Assembly (NCBI GenBank): GCA_025786725.1
Contig: JAHLTZ010000024.1
Location: 124,001-188,000 of the forward strand
Length of the DNA: 64,000 bases
Direction: 5' to 3'
Source of the DNA: Syncephalis fuscata S228
Taxonomy: Eukaryota; Fungi; Zoopagomycota
In this document: one piece after another, positions 6,083-55,734 of the stretch
Numbering within the stretch: position 1 is the stretch's first letter
Layout: every line of letters starts with the position of its first letter
Notes under the pieces: model-generated
The model's database searches: none
What the model was told of the DNA's origin: nothing
The model's input: the letters and a program-made list of their open reading frames with translations, nothing else
Position numbers and translations under genes: made by a program

Positions 6083-7796
6083 ATGCAAAGTATACTGCGT
6101 ACCTGGCGAGACCAACCGCCAAACCAACAAACAGCGACAGACAACGACAATAGCACTCAAAACCCGCAGTCCGACCGCCCAACTGACCTAGAAGCAGGCC
6201 ACAGTAGACGTGAGGCCGAGCCAACGACTCCAACCAACAACAGCAACAACAATGCTACAGCTACGACGCCGGCCACAACAGCCCCAGAACAGCTTAGTAT
6301 GGCTTGTGACCCGCTAACTTATGGGCGCGGCCTTTACTTTGGACCACAGTTCATTGGCACGACCGATAGTGCGGAGGAGTTGGGGGATACAGTATGGCGT
6401 CGGGTCGGCAGAGCAAGTGGAACTAGCAATCGGCTTTCTTTAATACTAAACGATGAAAGTGAGTTCAATCGACAACGAAGTAATAGCACACAAAATGCAA
6501 CCAATAGCTTGAAGAAATTAAAGGTAAATAAGTTATTAGTCATTTACCACCGACTAACTAAGGTGCTAAATCGTCTAGAACAATGATGAAAGTAACACTA
6601 CGAGTTGTACAGAAATTCACTGTGCTTTCAATGTCCATAACATTGCTCTAGTTCAGACAGGGACATCTGTTGCTAATAAAGAGAAAGGAGCGGTAGAAGA
6701 TGGCGGCAATGTTCCAGCGACAGCACATGGTCGATATCGGTTAACTTTCCAACTAGATGCATTGCGTCCAGGGAAACTTACCGTGGCTTGGCTGTCGCAA
6801 CAATATCCAGCCCATGATACACCTGGTTGCATAGCGTACGTAATAAATATTTAAAAAGTATATTGGTACTAATGTATTGGCTATCATTAGAATACGCAAT
6901 GCAACTACGCCACTGCCGGTACCAGCCACACACCACACGACATTTACTCAAGGCGTAGATCAGCTGTATAATGCACCAGATGAGCATCTTCTATCGCCGG
7001 ACGAGTTACCTGATCAACAGACGCTTATTCTACGCTCTATAGCCGAGCCTACTGAGACTGACAATACAGTCAATGAAATGGCTCCAAATGGCATTATTCA
7101 AACCGCATTGACTCGAGTGGCAACTGCCATTTCACTGTCAAATCAACAAGAAGATGCCACTCAGCCCGACATGGTAAACGCATGTTCATCAACAAACGAT
7201 ATTACCGACATCCCAATGATTTCTCTGAACAGCCATACCTCTACTGATATTCCATTACTAATTCTAATGGAAGCCGAGTCAGGCAAATATATTAATACCT
7301 AACTATGTAAAAGACTAAACATTATATTAGGCTCACAGTCATTGCTTACATTTGCATCGTTGACAAATCCATTAACGGATGGCGTAAATTCGATGACTAT
7401 TTTATTACAAAAGTTCCGAGTAAGTATAGTGGATTAATGTTGTATATGATTACTAAATAGATGTTCGTTGTAGACCAGAGGACAAACATATGTACTTGAA
7501 CGAATATATGGCGTAGAAGAAGAGGAAAACACGGTCAAGGTTGAGGCTAATAGCGATACTCTACCGACCACCGAAGAGACAGGAACCTGTGTTGTCTGCA
7601 TTGCAGATCCATCAATGGTAGCCGTGCTTCCTTGTCGCCATTTATGCCTATGCATGGAATGCGCGGAAGAACTAAGGAACCGCAGTTGTTTCTGTCCTAT
7701 TTGTCGACAAGGTAAATATACAATTAGTAATTATTTGACCGTGATACTAACATTGATCTAGCATTCCATACGATGATTTGTATTGGTGATCAGTAA
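6083..7796 (+). CDS. RING (C3HC4) E3 ubiquitin ligase, MGRN1/RNF157/LOG2-like, multi-exon
   Basis: YFGPQF; YVLERIYG...CVVCIADPSMVAVLPCRHLCLCMECAEELRNRSCFCPICRQ. Confidence 0.85.
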
Positions 7797-7840
7797 TTTT
7801 GGTGAATATGTGTGATGTTATTGTTATTGCTGTTATGGTT

Positions 7841-8491
7841 GCATTTTACTTTGACTCCAAATGTGGGAGTCTCCAAAGTACAATCCGTTTCAATCAAGGT
7901 CATGTCATTATTATACATAACATAGTTATATTACTTTTTATTAAATGTTGTTAATAAATTGATTTAAATAAATAATGTAACATACCAGTCGGTTTCTTTG
8001 GAATATTTGAGGCCAATTATTATTGTTGTTGGCCATGTGTAGAAATATTGATCGAATATTAATAGAAGCCATATGACTGCAATTCCATGTCATTCCTCAT
8101 TTGTTGTTAGTGCATCTATCTACAACATGGATTCTTGCGTTTGAATGGTTTGTTCTATTTTCTAATATTCTACTATTGCATTTTGAGCATGTTTGCAATG
8201 TAAGAGCAAGATTAATATAATTAGTATAAAGTTGTTTATTAAACAGCCACTTTTTCTATAACCAATCTGACTAAATAAATGGCATTTTGAACAACTAATA
8301 TCACAATGACAATATATACATTAAAGCAATAATAAAGATAACTAGTTGATTACATTATTGTATTGATAATTACACATGAATTAATTAATATTGGATGTAA
8401 TATTATACATGTTGTAGTAATGAACAAGTATTTAATTATATTTAAAAGTGAAGGAATGAAATGGATAAATAGAAATGTAGGAGTCACAGTA
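7841..8491 (-). mobile_element. Degenerate non-autonomous element with TIR-like ends carrying a Fanzor/TnpB C-terminal remnant (copy 1)
   Basis: Minus strand 8204-7941 reads LTLQTCSKCNSR...RIHVVDRCTNNK*GMTWNCSHMASINIRSIFLHMANNNNNWPQIFQR; imperfect inverted ends TACTTTGACTCC (7847-7858) and GGAGTCACAGTA (8480-8491); homologous copy at 37.6-38.1 kb. Confidence 0.7.
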
Positions 8492-11400
8492 GCTCCCCTA
8501 AGAGTAATTGGTTGTCGATCTTATGTGTCGACCAATAAATATCAATAAGCTTTACCAAGTTATTAATAGCAACATTAAAAGTAAAATAATACAGCATACT
8601 TGGTGAATAGATGTGATAAACTATTAATTACATTCAAAATTAATTCGTTTAATGAACAGATTAGAATATCAGTGGCACATGTCTATCCGAATAAATTATA
8701 CCAAACAAGATTATATTAAATAACCATTGGCTGTAAATCGTATTCTCTACTATAGTACTAATACCGCGTGACATTTGGACTGAACTATATTTAGACACGG
8801 CATATGGTTATTCATTGCCGCAATATGCATCCATGTCTGTAGGTGCTCATTCTCTATGCCTATGAAATCGCATAGCTGATAATAAACAGCGAATGGCATC
8901 AATGGCTACAGAAAATTTAACGCAATGACTGTAGATGTCCGACACTATCAATACAGCATCAGCTTATGCATGCGTGCATGATTTTCGAGCCGCCACGTAT
9001 TGACGAGCTATTGACCGTTCTCTTTCCCTTTCTTGCTTGCTGCTTTCATTAATTTTGTTTATTCACTTTGAGCGAACAGTGAGTTTGTGTGCGCGCAAGT
9101 GTTTCAGACGTAGCTTTGTTATCGCTTTGGCAATTATTTTGTATAAAACCACGCCGTATTACACTTTTGCATTTCTTTAGTACATCCACCTTCCCCTGGC
9201 CGTTTTTCTAGGCGAGTAAGCAAGAGAGTAGACGAACCACTCCTACAGAATCATCTCCAACGTTCCACACTCTACGTGTCACCACACCCCCACCGCCTGT
9301 GTCTGCCTTTACCGACTACAGTCTTCGTGTTAAAACACAGTAACAGGTGAGTAAGATGCTGGATATACAGCCTACACGGAATCATCCATTACGCCTTTGT
9401 CCTGTCGTTTGCACGTTCTTCAGCTTTTTTTTGATATTCTGAGATAGCCACACCTATTTACAGGTTTCATTTGCTCGATTATTTCGCCCCAACATTCGAT
9501 GCAAATGAAGCAGCAATTCTCGTGCTGCACAATCAACATCCGTCACAAAACTATGATATCTCGCTAAATACTTTACTCATTTGTTTCACCGCTTCTTACC
9601 CGACGGCTACTTGTCATACCATTCCACGTGGCTACTTACTGTTGCGGGCAAGAGATGAATTTCCTTATTCATGGGTTTTACCACATTTAGTTTCAAATTC
9701 TTTCTCTTTCTTTACCACTAACTTCGCTTCACGTTTCCCTATGTTCTTTCGCGGCTATAACGGTTAAAAGTCTATTTCTAGCACTTTATCGTACTATCAC
9801 ATCATATCCGTTGATAAAAACACTACCCTGGGCCATTGTTTGTAATAGCGTCACTCTGTATCCTCGCTTTTACGAACTGCTTTTACTTAAGCATAGTCAG
9901 GGCAACTCTACCAAAGTGCGTTCAGAAGGCTATTACAGCACTTTGTCCTTGACCTATTCTCTTTATCCTTCTTACTTTTTCACGTACACGCCTGCTACAT
10001 AGTTCTCTCCTTCTCTACGTTGCTTTATTGGTTTTGCTTTACCTGTGTCAATAACGTGTTATTCTTACTGTAGTGCAACGTAAAGCTTCGACTCGCTATC
10101 GCCTACAATACAGACGACACCAACACTTGTTAGTGTCGTTACTCCACACACACACACACCTATACAAACCTATACATACATAAATACGTAACACCAAACG
10201 CACTTACAAGGCTTTTGTTATCACTACTACTACTACCACCCACCACTACCAGGGAGAACTTGCGAATATCGGTTGAAAACGGTAAGTCAACTGCGGCCAT
10301 GATACAATAAGAGGGACGGTGGAGGTTCTGCAGATTTAAAACTATTGTAGGATTGGCACGGCATGGCACAGAAGTTGCTGCCGCTGCTGCTGCCACGGCT
10401 ACTTATTATTCCAGTCCATTATTACTGGATTGATTAATTTAAGCAAACATATTCTTATGGTCATCAATACGACTATTATCTACTTGCATTGCCCCTGGCA
10501 TTGTAAATATGGGTTTTTATTTATATACTACGGCCATAAGCCATTATGTGCTATTCCACATGTTATACAGGGGCTGTTATTTGCAGGAGATTTAGGTGCA
10601 TTTGTACTTTTGAGCTTACTGGTTCCGTTGATATGTGCCATAAACATTTACCGACGAGTACAATCAAGTGCATTTGATATTATTTTGTTAAATTTCTACG
10701 TAGCTAAAACAGCCACTGCACAATTATGTATGTATTTTACGTATTTACACTATTGCAATAACAACAATACTGTGATATAATGATAGTAATAATAATGTTT
10801 ATTTTATTATTCTAATTGATGGAAATAGCCATTATATTTCCAAATGCCTTTTTGATTTAACCGATGCCATTCCTTGCTTTATCCCTGCCTAGTCGATTGA
10901 TTGCTGCTATTCTATTTAGTTGGAAATGACGACAATAGTAATGATGGAATGCTGATATGCTAATAGCATTATCATTATAAATGTCGGCTCTCCTTTCCCC
11001 TCGTTCTCCTTTGAATTGCAGCTGCAACAATAGCGATGACGGTCATCGGCGGTTTAACAAACTCTAATACGACTACCTAAACTGCTATCTTTGATCGGTT
11101 TGAATGTGCCTACCTTTAACAACTTGCTGTTACAACTGGAATGCCCCTTTCAGTTCGGCCACTGTTCGTTACATACGAACATAAGCCGCATTTCTATATT
11201 TTAATGCTCTTGCTTCGCTCTTGTACTGTCCTGCCCCTTGATTCCCTTATTACTCTCACGCCTAAACCGCACTGCTACGGCGCTTTTGTATAACGCTTTC
11301 CCACACTCGTACATTCACGATCGCTCGCATACGGCCTTGCACTGTATCCTGCTTAGTGGTGTATGTAACTGCGTGTCAGTAGCACTACGAGTTTCCCACC

Positions 11401-37429: not shown

Positions 37430-37617
37430 ACTATTGAGTAGCTTACGAAGATTGATGGTAAATGCAGATAGTTACCTATACGATTAGTATACGTATATGT
37501 GAAACAAATAAAGCGATGAAAGTTATAGATGCAGAATCGAGAATAAAAACGAAGAAGGATTACGAATTTGATCAGCGATATTATAATAAATAATTCAGTA
37601 TTTTGTTTGTATTTTGT

Positions 37618-38141
37618 TTAAAATATTGTTAATAAATTGATTTAAATGATGTAACATACTATTTGATTTCTTTGAGACATTTGAGGCTGATTATTGTTGT
37701 TAATCATGTGTAGAAAGATTGATTGAATATTAATAAAAGCCATATAATTTCAATTTCATGTCATTCCGTATTTGTTGTTATTACATCTACGTACAGCATG
37801 GATTCTTGCGCTTGAATGGTTTTTTATATTTTACAATACGTTACTATTGTATTTTGGACATATTTGTGCTGTAAGATCAATATTAATATAATTAGTATAA
37901 ATATTTATTAAACAGCCACTTTTCGTATAGTCAATTTGACTAAATAAATAGCTATGTATGTATGTTAGAGCAATAATAAAAATAACTAATTAATCACATT
38001 ATCATATTGCTGATTACACGTGAATTAATTAATGTGGGATGTAATATTATACGTGTTATAGTGATGAATAGATGTTTAATTATATTTAAAAGTGAAGAGG
38101 TGAAATAGGTAAATAAAATATAAAAGTCAAAGTAAAATAAC
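37618..38141 (-). mobile_element. Second, more decayed copy of the Fanzor-remnant element
   Basis: Collinear homology to 7940-8490; minus strand reads LTAQICPKYNS...RIHAVRRCNNNKYGMT*N*NYMAFINIQSIFLHMINNNNQPQMSQR. Confidence 0.68.
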
Positions 38142-53684: not shown

Positions 53685-55734
53685 ATGATGTCTCACGACC
53701 TATCCATCGGCGTTTCTAAATTATCCGTAGAACCTGACAACATGAATGGACAGCCGTCAACGCTGACGGTTACAGCACCGGATACAACGGTAGCAGTGAA
53801 TACAAGCGTACAAACAGGCCATGTAATGTCCCCATTAGCGGAAGCACACCACCACGCCCCCACCGATGACCATCGATGCTATAGACATCGATCTGCTGAT
53901 CGAAGAAAAGCAGATGAGCGTATACATACTGAATTACAGCAGGTAAGTTGATTTGCCAACCAATTACGAAATTATTAACAGTATTTTATTAGGAATTACA
54001 GCAGTATTCAACAGCTGATCAAGACGCAATCCAGCAAGTCTGGAAGCTATTTGGTAGTGCAACGCCACAACTACGTCGAATAATGCTAGGTGGCATGCTA
54101 TTTCATTCTTGTCTGCCGCAGCTATCGTATCTTTCTCAGCATCTTGATCCATGTTACGTATCGACTTTCTTGCTACGTTACCCACCGAAATATCGTTCAA
54201 AATCCTTCGACATTTGGATGCACAGTCGCTGTGTCGTGCTGCACAAGTGTCGTCGATATGGCGACATTTAGCCGACGACGATGCAGTTTGGCGACGTATT
54301 TGTGAACAGCACATTGATCGTAAATGCACCAAATGCGGATGGGGTCTACCGCTATTGGACCGATCAAAACGAAGACGTTGCAAAGAAGATCGAGTAGTGC
54401 AAGAGCAGGCCGATCGACTACGCGGTGTTAGCCGAACGGATAGTCAAGAATATTTACGAGACCATGACGGCGCGTTGATTGAAAAGCACTCGGATAGCGA
54501 TGATGATCAGCACCAGAGTAAAAAGCCGCGCTTAACACATTCGACCACCGAATGTGATAATAGTCAACCAACAGCCATTACCGGTGCTGTTTCAGAACCT
54601 GTATGGCGTAGACCATGGAAAGAGGTGTATACAGAACGAGCTATTATTGAACGCAATTGGCGATGCGGTCAATATACATCTCGAGTACTAAAAGGCCATA
54701 CCGACGGCGTTATGTGTCTACAGTTTGATGATACTTATTTATGCACCGGCGGCTATGACGCTACAGTTCGTGTATGGTGTATTAAAACTGGCCGATGTCT
54801 ACGCCTGCTTAAAGGCCATACTCGGTGTGTACGTGCACTAACATTTGACGATGTTAAACTTGTAACTGCCTCAATGGATCGCACAATACGTGTATGGAAT
54901 TATCGCACTGGCGAATGCATGCGTATACTTGAAGGCCACACAGATGGCGTGGTGTGTATTAGTGCCAATCGTACACTGCTAGTTAGTGGAGGTGCCGATG
55001 CAACAGTCAAAGTATGGAACTTTGAGCAACGGTCCTGCCATACATTAAGAGGCCACACCGACTGGGTAAATGCGGTAGAGCTGCACCGCGACCGCTGGGT
55101 GTTCTCTGGATCCGACGACACTACAGTTAGACTGTGGGATTTAAAAAACTTTTATTGTGTTCGTATATTCCAAGGACATGTGGGACAAGTACAATCTATT
55201 TCTATTACGCCCAGCGGCAATGCTATGACAGATGAGGAATTTATTGCTTGGCTAGCTTTAGGCAAGGATGGGTCATCTACAGCATCAGTATCATCGTCGT
55301 CATCATCACCACCTGGGTCATCTGGAGCACAACATTCAGCATTATCACCCTCGACATTATCCACCAGCACAAATACCAACAATTCATTAGCTACATCACG
55401 TTCAGCCTATCATTCGCATGTACCACAGCTAATGACAGGTGCATTGGATAATACACTGCGTGTATTTAATCTACGAACTGGCGAATGTGAACGTACCTTC
55501 TTTGGCCACGTAGAAGGTGTTTGGTGCGTAGCTGTGGATTCATTACGTGTCGTAAGTGGTGCACACGATAAAACACTGCGTATATGGGACCCCAATACCG
55601 GCACCTGTATGCACTCATTCAACGGCCATCGAGGTGCCGTAACATGTGTCGGTCTTAGCGATACACGTGTTGTTACGGGCAGCGATGACTGTGAGATTCG
55701 TATTTGGGATTTTGGACCACAAGAAGGTATATAG
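53685..55734 (+). CDS. MET30: F-box/WD40 sulfur regulator Met30/SconB/Pof1
   Basis: HRCYRHRS, D-domain, IDFLATLPTEISFKIL F-box, CEQHIDRKCTKCGWGLPLL, seven WD40 repeats. Confidence 0.92.

What the first reader, a model, noticed from the sequence alone, without database searches (positions are those of the whole stretch)
7841..8491. Hidden Fanzor (eukaryotic TnpB/OMEGA nuclease) remnant in a short element with TIR-like ends
Seen: this 'intergenic' AT-rich stretch translates on the minus strand (8204-7941, 88 codons, one internal TGA at 8097-8099) to LTLQTCSKCNSRILENRTNHSNARIHVVDRCTNNK*GMTWNCSHMASINIRSIFLHMANNNNNWPQIFQR. Known: TnpB/Fanzor C-termini read T-S-x-x-C-x2-C...C-x(n)-C...W-N-R-D-x-x-A-x-x-N-I...R-P-x-x-F, i.e. 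zinc finger plus RuvC-III. Inference: combining the two copies with the family motif gives LTSQTCSKC...RIHAVRRCTNNKCGMTWNRDHMASINIRSIFLHMANNNN.RPQIFQR; the S, the fourth C, RD and R come from the family motif rather than either copy. Only about 290 bp lie upstream before the other end, so this looks like an internally deleted derivative that kept just the 3' end. That would imply a Fanzor family in this genome. The ORF track misses it completely.
Basis: partly seen in the sequence, partly recalled or inferred. Interest (0 to 1): 0.9.

Follow-up and report, generated by a model that had tools for sequence, protein, structure and literature searches.

The report
Decayed Fanzor1 tail inside a MITE
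This stretch is one old, dead copy of a short jumping element, present in hundreds of copies in the fungus Syncephalis fuscata, that still carries the broken tail end of a Fanzor1 RNA-guided nuclease gene; it shows Fanzor transposons once lived in this genome but is otherwise ordinary transposon debris.

Summary

**The element.** Window 7837-8496 is a 660-bp copy of a short element with terminal inverted repeats (TIRs).
- A DNA search of the genome gave 651 first-look candidates; 40 were scored, at 81-87% identity.
- The 20-nt TIR core occurs 413 times, against 1 for the control pattern.

**The Fanzor remnant.** The minus strand at 8204-7995 encodes 70 codons that line up with the extreme C-terminus of Fanzor1 proteins.
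- The two window pieces match a Mucor circinelloides 912-aa protein at residues 837-871 and 878-908. The second piece is 24/31 identical (E 6e-16).
- 12 of 15 sister-copy peptides hit Pfam PF07282 (Cas12f1-like TNB domain).
- A profile of the full-length relatives hits the solved Spizellomyces Fanzor1 structure at 1.9e-70.

**State of the remnant.** It is dead.
- RuvC-I and RuvC-II are missing.
- The window copy has TGA at the fourth zinc cysteine and C-S in place of R-D.
- Only 5 of 26 independent copies keep the frame, and substitutions show no codon-position bias.

**Parent and RNA.**
- No intact parent Fanzor of this lineage was found in the assembly. Only a longer (~900 bp) deletion derivative and decayed relics of other lineages were found.
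- There is no support for a conserved omegaRNA fold.
- The element's left end now forms most of the 3'UTR of the upstream RING-finger gene.

Other first readers of this scan noted Fanzor relics elsewhere in this genome.

The parts
7837..8496 (.). One 660-bp copy of a high-copy non-autonomous TIR element (MITE-like, 'class 1').
   Evidence: The own-genome DNA search gave 651 candidates, 40 scored at 81-87% identity. The ends come from the alignment of 30 copies. This copy has no TSD. An 8-bp TSD is seen in sister copies: L010 with 0 mismatches, L015 and L026 with 1, L008 with 2.
7837..7866 (+). Left TIR. This is the end next to the 3' end of the Fanzor remnant.
   Evidence: Family alignment. 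The core TACTTTGACTCYYACATTTT occurs 203 times forward and 210 times reverse in the genome, against 1 for the control.
7847..7880 (.). Subterminal palindrome. The TIR core is followed by its own inverted copy, which forms a bulged 12-bp hairpin.
   Evidence: Read directly from the sequence. It appears as the 3'-terminal hairpin in the MFE fold. Most sister copies have it in degenerate form (alignment).
7995..8204 (-). Fanzor1 C-terminal remnant of 70 codons, covering the (T)SQ-CxxC...C..C zinc ribbon, the RuvC-III position and the R-P-x-x-F-Q-R tail. It is a pseudogene fragment.
   Evidence: Translation. BLASTP to Mucor P0263 at residues 837-871 (E 4e-5) and 878-908 (24/31 identical, E 6e-16). 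PF07282 hits in sister copies.
8097..8099 (-). In-frame TGA at the codon of the fourth zinc-binding cysteine.
   Evidence: This codon is TGC or TGT in 20 of 30 sister copies and TGA in 4.
8076..8081 (-). The two codons at the RuvC-III R-D position. They read TGC AGT (C-S) here.
   Evidence: Class-1 copies mostly have TGC AAT. Class-2 copies have CGC AAT or CGC GAT. R832 and D833 are invariant in the 14 full-length relatives.
7980..7985 (-). GTATGT splice-donor-like hexamer 9 nt after the FQR codons.
   Evidence: Sequence. The Mucor and Parasitella homologues have a GTATG/GTACA donor-like site directly after FQR/FRR, followed by a short intron-like stretch. This is an inference and was not tested.
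8205..8466 (.). Non-coding part of the element on the 5' side. The deletion or replacement breakpoint relative to the ~900-bp class lies at 8204/8205.
   Evidence: Alignment with class-2 copies. An RNA contig from a class-2 copy departs from the window sequence right after 8205 (loose ends).
8467..8496 (-). Right TIR, with a 5-nt deletion in this copy.
   Evidence: (pair I24).
37610..38134 (+). Second, more decayed copy of the same family in the window. Its left end is missing and the remnant carries three stops.
   Evidence: blastn at 78% over 560 nt; tblastn with a sister peptide at E 1e-22.
7797..7963 (+). 3'UTR of the upstream RING-finger gene (stop codon at 7794-7796). It runs about 127 nt into the element.
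   Evidence: A spliced RNA contig (introns 7420-7473 and 7712-7761 removed) covers 7760-7963 with 1 mismatch and then ends in adapter sequence.

Best explanation
**What it is.** The stretch is a fossil copy of a miniature, non-autonomous DNA transposon. The family has about 30-nt TIRs and, where still visible, an 8-bp target-site duplication. It probably arose by internal deletion of a larger TIR transposon that carried a Fanzor1 gene as a passenger.

**What was kept.**
- About 290 bp of one end.
- About 370 bp of the other end. This part holds the last 70 codons of Fanzor1 (zinc ribbon, RuvC-III and the C-terminal tail) plus about 160 bp between the ORF and the TIR.

**History (inferred).** The short element was amplified to hundreds of copies by a transposase supplied in trans. 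That transposase is not identified. Amplification then stopped, and the copies have since drifted neutrally: about 16% pairwise divergence, with a strong bias towards transitions.

**Present state.**
- The peptide is not made and has no function. It lacks RuvC-I and RuvC-II, has a stop at a zinc cysteine, and has lost the catalytic R-D.
- The only current role shown for this copy is passive. Its left end is transcribed on the opposite strand as most of the 3'UTR of the neighbouring RING-finger gene.

**Shown versus inferred.**
- Shown: repeat family, TIRs, homology to the Fanzor1 C-terminus, decay, the longer sister class, the 3'UTR overlap.
- Inferred: the deletion origin, mobilisation in trans, and the superfamily of the transposase.
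For: **Copy number and ends.**

**Homology.**
- Window pieces against Mucor P0263: E 4e-5 and 6e-16, colinear at the C-terminus.
- Sister peptide L039 against P0125: 43% identity over 108 aa, E 3e-25.
- 12 of 15 sister peptides hit PF07282.
- The A1 profile gives 123 hits, and the long ones match at their extreme C-terminus.
- The A2 profile hits the solved Fanzor1 structures at 1e-53 to 2e-70.

**Deletion series.** The ~900-bp class has identical ends and about 430 bp more Fanzor coding sequence. The breakpoint is at 8204/8205.

**No selection on the peptide.**
- Mismatch to the majority by codon position is 0.083 / 0.110 / 0.070.
- 12 of 26 copies are frameshifted, 9 carry stops and 5 are open.

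**Parent missing.**
- Full-length queries match the genome only by their last 110-140 residues.
- Their N-terminal parts and the N-terminal profile A5 find nothing better than E 0.02.

**3'UTR.**

**Literature.**
- Fanzor1 rides non-autonomous TIR elements, MuDR-like in Mucorales (PMC3627910).
- hAT is the most frequent association (PMC10530073).
Against: - No full-length element with these TIRs and an intact Fanzor was found. Deletion from a Fanzor-carrying parent therefore cannot be told apart from capture of a Fanzor fragment by an unrelated element.
- The genome searches score only the best candidates, and the assembly has 371 contigs, so an intact parent could have been missed.
- The window copy has no TSD, and most copies have poor TSDs.
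- The transposase superfamily is unresolved. The 8-bp TSD fits hAT, but no hAT dimerisation domain was found (and the control was silent). MULE transposase domains exist but were not linked to these TIRs.
Confidence: 0.8

Rival explanations
1. Guide-RNA hitchhiker. The element kept the Fanzor 3' end and the ORF-to-TIR spacer because this is the omegaRNA (fRNA) gene. On this reading the MITE copies would be, or once were, guide-only elements served in trans by a Fanzor1 protein, which cuts empty sites and restores the element by homology-directed repair.
For: - In Fanzor and TnpB systems the guide RNA overlaps the 3' end of the ORF and the transposon end or TIR (PMC10530073, Discussion).
- Both deletion classes kept exactly this end.
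- The single-sequence fold of 8110-7833 (minus strand) is somewhat more stable than shuffles (z -2.2) and has a terminal hairpin.
Against: - RNAalifold on 21 copies gives -7.2 kcal/mol and essentially no covariation.
- Conservation of this part (mismatch 0.14-0.29) is lower than that of the interior (0.07-0.09).
- No intact Fanzor1 was found that could use it.
- There is no DNA similarity to the region downstream of the Mucor or Parasitella genes.
- In the one RNA data set, this copy's left end is covered as the 3'UTR of a plus-strand gene, which is antisense to the putative guide.
- Subterminal sequences are needed for transposition anyway, so their retention is not specific evidence.
Confidence: 0.08
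2. Fragment capture. A pre-existing non-autonomous hAT- or MULE-type element picked up a piece of a Fanzor1 gene (Pack-MULE-like transduplication) and then amplified. On this reading the TIRs never belonged to a Fanzor-carrying transposon.
For: - No parent with these TIRs and a whole Fanzor was found.
- MULE transposase domains are present in the genome.
- The longer relics with RuvC-I (C317, C190) share neither DNA nor TIRs with this family.
Against: - The fragment lies in the position and orientation expected for a Fanzor passenger gene, with the ORF 3' end facing the transposon end.
- Two nested deletion classes share both ends.
- Fanzor1 genes inside non-autonomous TIR elements are the documented norm (PMC3627910, PMC10530073).
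Confidence: 0.1
3. Chance open frame, or an unrelated zinc-finger peptide in AT-rich intergenic DNA.
For: The two window pieces alone give only a sub-threshold zf_UBZ hit (E 0.042) and no PF07282 hit.
Against: Colinear matches to the Fanzor1-like C-terminus at E 6e-16 and 4e-5, together with the family-level evidence.
Confidence: 0.01

Closest known systems
Fanzor1 (eukaryotic TnpB-like RNA-guided nuclease), Mucorales clade. Examples: Mucor circinelloides HMPREF1544_02846 (P0263), Parasitella parasitica (P0264). Solved relatives: SpuFz1 8GKH, GtFz1 9CER, PpFz1 9CF0.
   Same: The C-terminal module is the same: (D-E-Y)-x-T-S-Q-x-C-x-x-C ... C-x(2-4)-C ... W-N-R-D-H-M-A-S-x-N-I-R-S-I-F-L-H-M-A-x-N-N-N-x-R-P-x-x-F-Q-R. 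The window copy is 24/31 identical to P0263 over the tail.
   Different: - Only the last ~70 of about 570-1040 residues are present.
- RuvC-I (DPG) and the central domains are absent.
- The DEY glutamate is absent in this class.
- There is a stop at the fourth Cys, C-S replaces R-D, and W replaces R before P.
- It is not a gene.
Fanzor1-carrying non-autonomous TIR transposons. Examples: MuDR-like ROr-4/PBl-3/MCi-4 of Mucorales (Bao & Jurka 2013, PMC3627910); hAT-associated Fanzor1 (Jiang et al. 2023, PMC10530073).
   Same: A TIR-bounded element without a transposase, with Fanzor1 sequence facing one end. The closest protein relatives are mucoralean.
   Different: - Those elements carry a whole Fanzor1 ORF and are kilobases long. 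This one is a 660-bp stump amplified to hundreds of copies.
- The TSD here is 8 bp, against 9 bp reported for the MuDR-like elements of Mucorales.
- The host is a zoopagalean fungus. No paper in the searchable library mentions Fanzor for that group.
MITEs (miniature inverted-repeat transposable elements) derived by internal deletion of autonomous or passenger-carrying DNA transposons.
   Same: Short length, TIRs, TSD, high copy number, no coding capacity, insertion next to genes and use as UTR.
   Different: At 660-900 bp it is at the upper end of MITE sizes. Its interior is recognisably a nuclease-gene fragment.
Bacterial PATE-like derivatives of IS200/IS605 that keep the transposon ends.
   Same: A non-autonomous derivative that keeps the end where the TnpB-family guide RNA is encoded.
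   Different: There is no evidence here for a conserved RNA fold or a partner nuclease. The transposition chemistry also differs: this is a TIR/TSD element, not a single-strand Y1 element.

Membership tests
Fanzor1 / TnpB superfamily | C-terminal zinc-ribbon/TNB domain recognisable by profile (PF07282) | tested here: met
   12 of 15 sister-copy peptides hit PF07282, the best at 33.7 bits against a cut-off of 26.3. The window pieces alone do not hit it, but they align colinearly to Mucor P0263 residues 837-908.
Fanzor1 / TnpB superfamily | Relatives are bona fide Fanzor1 (link to solved structures) | tested here: met
   A profile of 14 full-length hits (A2) against the PDB gives SpuFz1 at 1.9e-70, GtFz1 at 1.1e-56 and PpFz1 at 1.1e-53. 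The profile of the remnants themselves has GtFz1 as top PDB hit, at E 0.023.
Fanzor1 / TnpB superfamily | RuvC-III catalytic Asp in the N-R-D motif | tested here: not met
   The window has TGC AGT (C-S). The class-1 majority is C-N. R-D survives only in a few sister copies. R832 and D833 are invariant in the full-length relatives.
Fanzor1 / TnpB superfamily | RuvC-I Asp (DPG motif) and the central/REC-WED domains | tested here: not met
   Absent from the 660-bp and ~900-bp elements. The N-terminal queries and profile A5 find no partner of this lineage in the genome.
Fanzor1 / TnpB superfamily | Conserved Glu of the D-E-Y-x-T-S-Q motif | tested here: not met
   The window reads I-N-L-A-L-T-L-Q. 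The motif is kept only in class-2 copies (I-D-E-Y-L-T-S-Q).
Fanzor1 / TnpB superfamily | Uninterrupted ORF | tested here: not met
   TGA at 8097-8099. Only 5 of 26 independent copies are open over the 70 codons.
Fanzor1 / TnpB superfamily | Associated structured guide RNA (omegaRNA/fRNA) at the ORF 3' end reaching the transposon end | tested here: inconclusive
   The single fold has z -2.2. The alignment fold gives -7.2 kcal/mol without covariation. No strand-specific or small-RNA data were available.
MITE / non-autonomous TIR DNA transposon | Terminal inverted repeats | tested here: met
   A ~30-nt TIR shared by 30 or more copies. 413 core matches against 1 for the control. The window copy's right TIR has a 5-nt deletion.
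MITE / non-autonomous TIR DNA transposon | Target-site duplication | tested here: inconclusive
   An 8-bp TSD with 0-2 mismatches at zero offset in 4 of about 18 copies. There is none for the window copy, and most others are degraded.
MITE / non-autonomous TIR DNA transposon | High copy number, short length, no transposase | tested here: met
   Length is 660 bp (class 1) or about 900 bp (class 2). The only coding trace is the Fanzor fragment.
hAT or Mutator superfamily (source of the transposase) | Autonomous element with matching TIRs and the superfamily's transposase | tested here: inconclusive
   PF05699 (hAT dimerisation) gave no match, but the control rang nowhere. PF10551 (MULE) gave 15 matches, four of them with open frames of 204-243 aa.

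The most novel reading that the evidence does not exclude
The family could be a guide-only satellite of a Fanzor1 system: a MITE that kept the omegaRNA gene and TIR and spread in Syncephalis. It may have arrived by horizontal transfer of a Fanzor1 transposon from the mucoralean hosts that this mycoparasite feeds on. If so, hundreds of dispersed guide-RNA genes would once have been, or in other strains still are, served in trans by one nuclease.
Probability: 0.07. Interest if true: 0.75.

Novelty: new member of a known kind. Interest (0 to 1): 0.3.

Why it matters
- It documents that Fanzor1-bearing DNA transposons were once active in Syncephalis fuscata, a zoopagalean mycoparasite. No paper in the searchable library reports Fanzor for that fungal group.
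- These transposons left a large MITE family, with hundreds of copies.
- For annotation, it explains many short 'Cas12f1-like TNB' hits and small spurious ORFs in this and related genomes. Thamnidium elegans has similar annotated fragments.
- It gives one concrete case of such debris being used as a gene's 3'UTR.
- The closest full-length relatives are all from Mucorales, the hosts of Syncephalis. This makes the family a possible test case for host-to-parasite transposon transfer, but the present data cannot decide that.
- It adds no new mechanism to Fanzor biology.

Tried and rejected
- **Pfam on the two window pieces alone:** no TnpB-type hit. I used sister copies instead.
- **PF01385 (OrfB_IS605) in the genome:** nothing. 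This is uninformative for Fanzor.
- **Single full-length relatives against the PDB:** nothing at E 0.01. Only the profile worked.
- **N-terminal parts of P0125 and P0129 against the genome:** nothing.
- **Closest-clade N-terminal profile A5:** one marginal hit, E 0.02, which belongs to a different and more divergent relic.
- **Broader profile A3:** found relics at C317:733831-734270 (with DPG) and C190:176254-176694. They are frameshifted or decayed and share no DNA or TIR with this family, so they are not the parent.
- **Conserved omegaRNA structure:** not supported.
- **DNA similarity to the region downstream of the Mucor and Parasitella Fanzor1 genes:** none beyond the coding tail.
- **Functional small zinc-ribbon peptide:** rejected, because there is no codon-position bias and most copies are broken.
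- **A fuzzy-regex TIR pairing script:** timed out. I replaced it with a Hamming search.
- **Fetching the MULE transposase loci and the 11.6-kb TIR-bounded intervals:** I did not pursue this by other means.
- **Supplement search for Syncephalis in Jiang et al. 2023:** no supplements are held.

Full report
**Organism and setting.** The window is G000:C157:124001-188000 of a 29.4-Mb assembly in 371 contigs. A window ORF (54151-55734) is 97% identical to an NCBI protein of Syncephalis fuscata. That protein lies on a contig of 443,508 bases, which is the length of C157. The genome is therefore S. fuscata, a zoopagalean fungus. From general knowledge, it is a mycoparasite of Mucorales.

**Observation.**
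- The stretch is a discrete repeat. A DNA search of the genome gave 651 first-look candidates, and the 40 scored were 81-87% identical over nearly the full length.
- An alignment of 30 copies with flanks places the termini at 7837 (GG...) and 8496 (...CC), so the copy is 660 bp.
- The TIR is about 30 nt with the core TACTTTGACTC(C/T)(C/T)ACATTTT. This 20-mer, with up to 2 mismatches, occurs 203 times forward and 210 times reverse, against 1 for the reversed control pattern.
- An 8-bp TSD is visible at zero offset in L010 (0 mismatches), L015 and L026 (1 each) and L008 (2). The window copy has none, and its right TIR carries a 5-nt deletion.

**Identity of the coding trace.**
- The two window pieces alone give no TnpB-type Pfam hit.
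- They do align colinearly to the C-terminus of a 912-aa Mucor circinelloides protein, P0263. Piece one covers residues 837-871 (13/35 identical, E 4e-5). Piece two covers 878-908 (24/31 identical, E 6e-16).
- Better-preserved sister copies settle the question. 12 of 15 open-frame peptides hit PF07282 (Cas12f1-like TNB domain), the best at 33.7 bits, E 4.1e-8.
- Their profile (A1) has Guillardia theta Fanzor1 as top PDB hit, across T-S-Q...C-x-x-C...W-N-R-N...N-I (E 0.023).
- Against 1.84 billion representatives, A1 finds 123 proteins. The best is a Thamnidium elegans fragment at 3e-18. The long hits (559-1037 aa, from Rhizomucor, Cunninghamella and metagenomes) match only at their extreme C-terminus and carry PF07282 there.
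- A profile of 14 such long proteins (A2) hits the solved Fanzor1 structures: SpuFz1 at 1.9e-70, GtFz1 at 1.1e-56, PpFz1 at 1.1e-53.
- A2 shows the invariant D of D-P-G, the E of D-E-Y, three Cys, R-D and N.
- The nearest full-length relatives of P0125 are all mucoralean: Mucor, Parasitella, Helicostylum, Benjaminiella, Umbelopsis. None is from Syncephalis.

They exist in natural sister copies.
- T-S-Q is common.
- The codon at 8097-8099 is TGC or TGT in 20 of 30 copies.
- The R-D position is CGC GAT in a few copies (L008, L044/L054, L046/L055). It is CGC AAT in most ~900-bp copies and TGC AAT in most 660-bp copies.
- Both changes at the R-D position are CpG transitions (the mutational reading is an inference).

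**Anatomy and origin.**
- A second class of about 900 bp (for example L052:126-911 and L051:8570-9372) has the same two ends. It keeps about 430 bp more Fanzor coding sequence upstream of T-S-Q (...P-I-I-I-A-Y-G......F-I-G/N-D-W......A-P-T-K-L......I-I-D-E-Y-L-T-S-Q).
- The two classes diverge exactly at 8204/8205. An RNA contig from a class-2 copy departs from the window at that point.
- Both classes lack RuvC-I.
- Full-length mucoralean queries match the genome only through their last 110-140 residues, at hundreds of places (360 and 420 candidates).
- Their N-terminal parts match nothing. The closest-clade N-terminal profile A5 gives one marginal hit, which belongs to another, more divergent relic.
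- A broader profile (A3) finds two longer relics of other lineages. C317:733831-734270 has an A-V-D-P-G RuvC-I motif but also frameshifts and stops downstream. C190:176254-176694 is the other. Neither shares DNA or TIRs with this family.
- With PF07282 the genome has 87 matches, about 26 of them over the cut-off.
- The genome therefore held several Fanzor1 lineages. Within the sensitivity of these searches, none is intact now.

**Decay.** Among 26 independent copies:
- Mean pairwise identity is 83.7%.
- Transitions outnumber transversions about 3.4 to 1.
- Mismatch to the majority by codon position is 0.083 / 0.110 / 0.070, so there is no third-position excess.
- 12 copies are frameshifted, 9 have stops and 5 are open over the 70 codons.

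The peptide is not under selection.

**Guide RNA question.**
- In Fanzor systems the guide RNA overlaps the ORF 3' end and the TIR (PMC10530073). The element keeps exactly that part.
- The single-sequence fold of 8110-7833 (minus strand) has z = -2.2 and a terminal bulged hairpin, formed by the TIR core and an adjacent inverted copy at 7847-7880.
- The alignment fold of 21 copies gives only -7.2 kcal/mol with no real covariation.
- This part is less conserved than the interior.
- It shows no similarity to the downstream regions of the Mucor and Parasitella genes.
- I rate a retained functional omegaRNA as unlikely and untested at the RNA level.

**Transcription.**
- One public run holds the stretch. 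It is kept as contigs and behaves as RNA, because two GT..AG introns of the upstream gene are spliced out.
- One contig covers 7474-7709 and 7760-7963 with a single mismatch and then ends in adapter sequence.
- The RING-finger gene (stop at 7794-7796) therefore has a 3'UTR that runs about 127 nt into the element's left end.
- Another contig begins at 8429, inside the right end, and runs beyond 9000.
- The interior 8210-8425 is uncovered. Coverage of 7994-8205 comes from contigs with 4-10 mismatches, which are other copies.
- Contigs cannot give strand or level.

**Transposase.**
- The 8-bp TSD fits hAT, which is the most frequent Fanzor1 partner (PMC10530073). No hAT dimerisation domain was found, although the control was silent.
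- MULE transposase domains are present, four of them in open frames of 204-243 aa. MuDR-like Fanzor1 elements are known from Mucorales, with 9-bp TSDs (PMC3627910).

**Verdict.** This is a real and well-supported Fanzor1 C-terminal fossil inside a highly amplified, now inert MITE family of S. fuscata. The kind is known: Fanzor1 riding non-autonomous TIR elements, and deletion derivatives of such elements. The fungal group is new for it.

Noticed in passing
window 7420-7473, 7712-7761, 7794-7963: The upstream RING-finger (C3HC4-like) gene has two short GT..AG introns that are confirmed by a spliced RNA contig. Its 3'UTR continues about 127 nt into the MITE and ends near AATAAA-like motifs around 7953-7975.
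   Followed up: partly
window 8429-9000 and beyond: A second RNA contig (968 nt) begins inside the right end of the element at 8429 and runs past 9000. The gene it belongs to was not identified: there is no ORF of 60 aa or more on either strand between 8549 and 9470.
   Followed up: no
G000:C317:733831-734270 (L068:2106-3305, minus strand): A longer Fanzor1 relic of another lineage. It has I-T-T-D-G-Y-S-V and A-V-D-P-G (RuvC-I) in a 235-aa open frame, then a frameshift, an F-G-D...I-D-E-Y segment and a stop-ridden zinc-ribbon region. It shares no DNA or TIR with the MITE family.
   Followed up: partly
G000:C190:176254-176694 (L069:1722-2246, plus strand): A 175-aa open frame that matches the central part of Fanzor1 up to L-V-F-G-D-W. 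The frame ends soon after that motif, and the downstream frames were not analysed.
   Followed up: partly
G000:C22:4302-15884 and G000:C168:48175-59769: Two intervals of about 11.59 kb, each bounded by perfect TIR cores in inverted orientation and each with a PF07282 hit at the same offset (about 7.5 kb). They could be a large composite or parent element, or a segmental duplication that contains several MITEs.
   Followed up: no
G000:C90:23312-23599, C351:15327-15614, C336:21728-22015, C339:307853-308140: MULE transposase domains (PF10551, E 1e-16 to 6e-19) in open frames of 204-243 aa. These may be live Mutator-like elements. A TIR core of the MITE family lies about 930 bp from the C351 hit, but it points away from it.
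   Followed up: no
G000:C113:205291-205422, C113:169724-169853, C204:10780-10910: In three places a full copy is directly abutted by an inverted ~135-bp partial copy of the remnant region (query positions 129-268).
   Followed up: no
L014/L018, L005/L025, L012/L020, L022/L024: Pairs of copies on different contigs share their flanking sequence as well. These are segmental duplications or uncollapsed haplotigs, so raw copy counts are somewhat inflated.
   Followed up: no
L070:5540-5680 (Mucor circinelloides), L071:5600-5740 (Parasitella parasitica): In both mucoralean Fanzor1-like genes a GTATG/GTACA donor-like site follows F-Q-R/F-R-R directly. After a short intron-like stretch there is a ~55-nt block conserved between the two species. 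The annotated stop may therefore lie inside an intron. The MITE has GTATGT 9 nt after F-Q-R.
   Followed up: partly
P0121 cluster (Thamnidium elegans): Thamnidium elegans has several annotated 71-288-aa 'partial' proteins that consist of the same Fanzor1 C-terminal tail. This suggests similar relic families in Mucorales.
   Followed up: no
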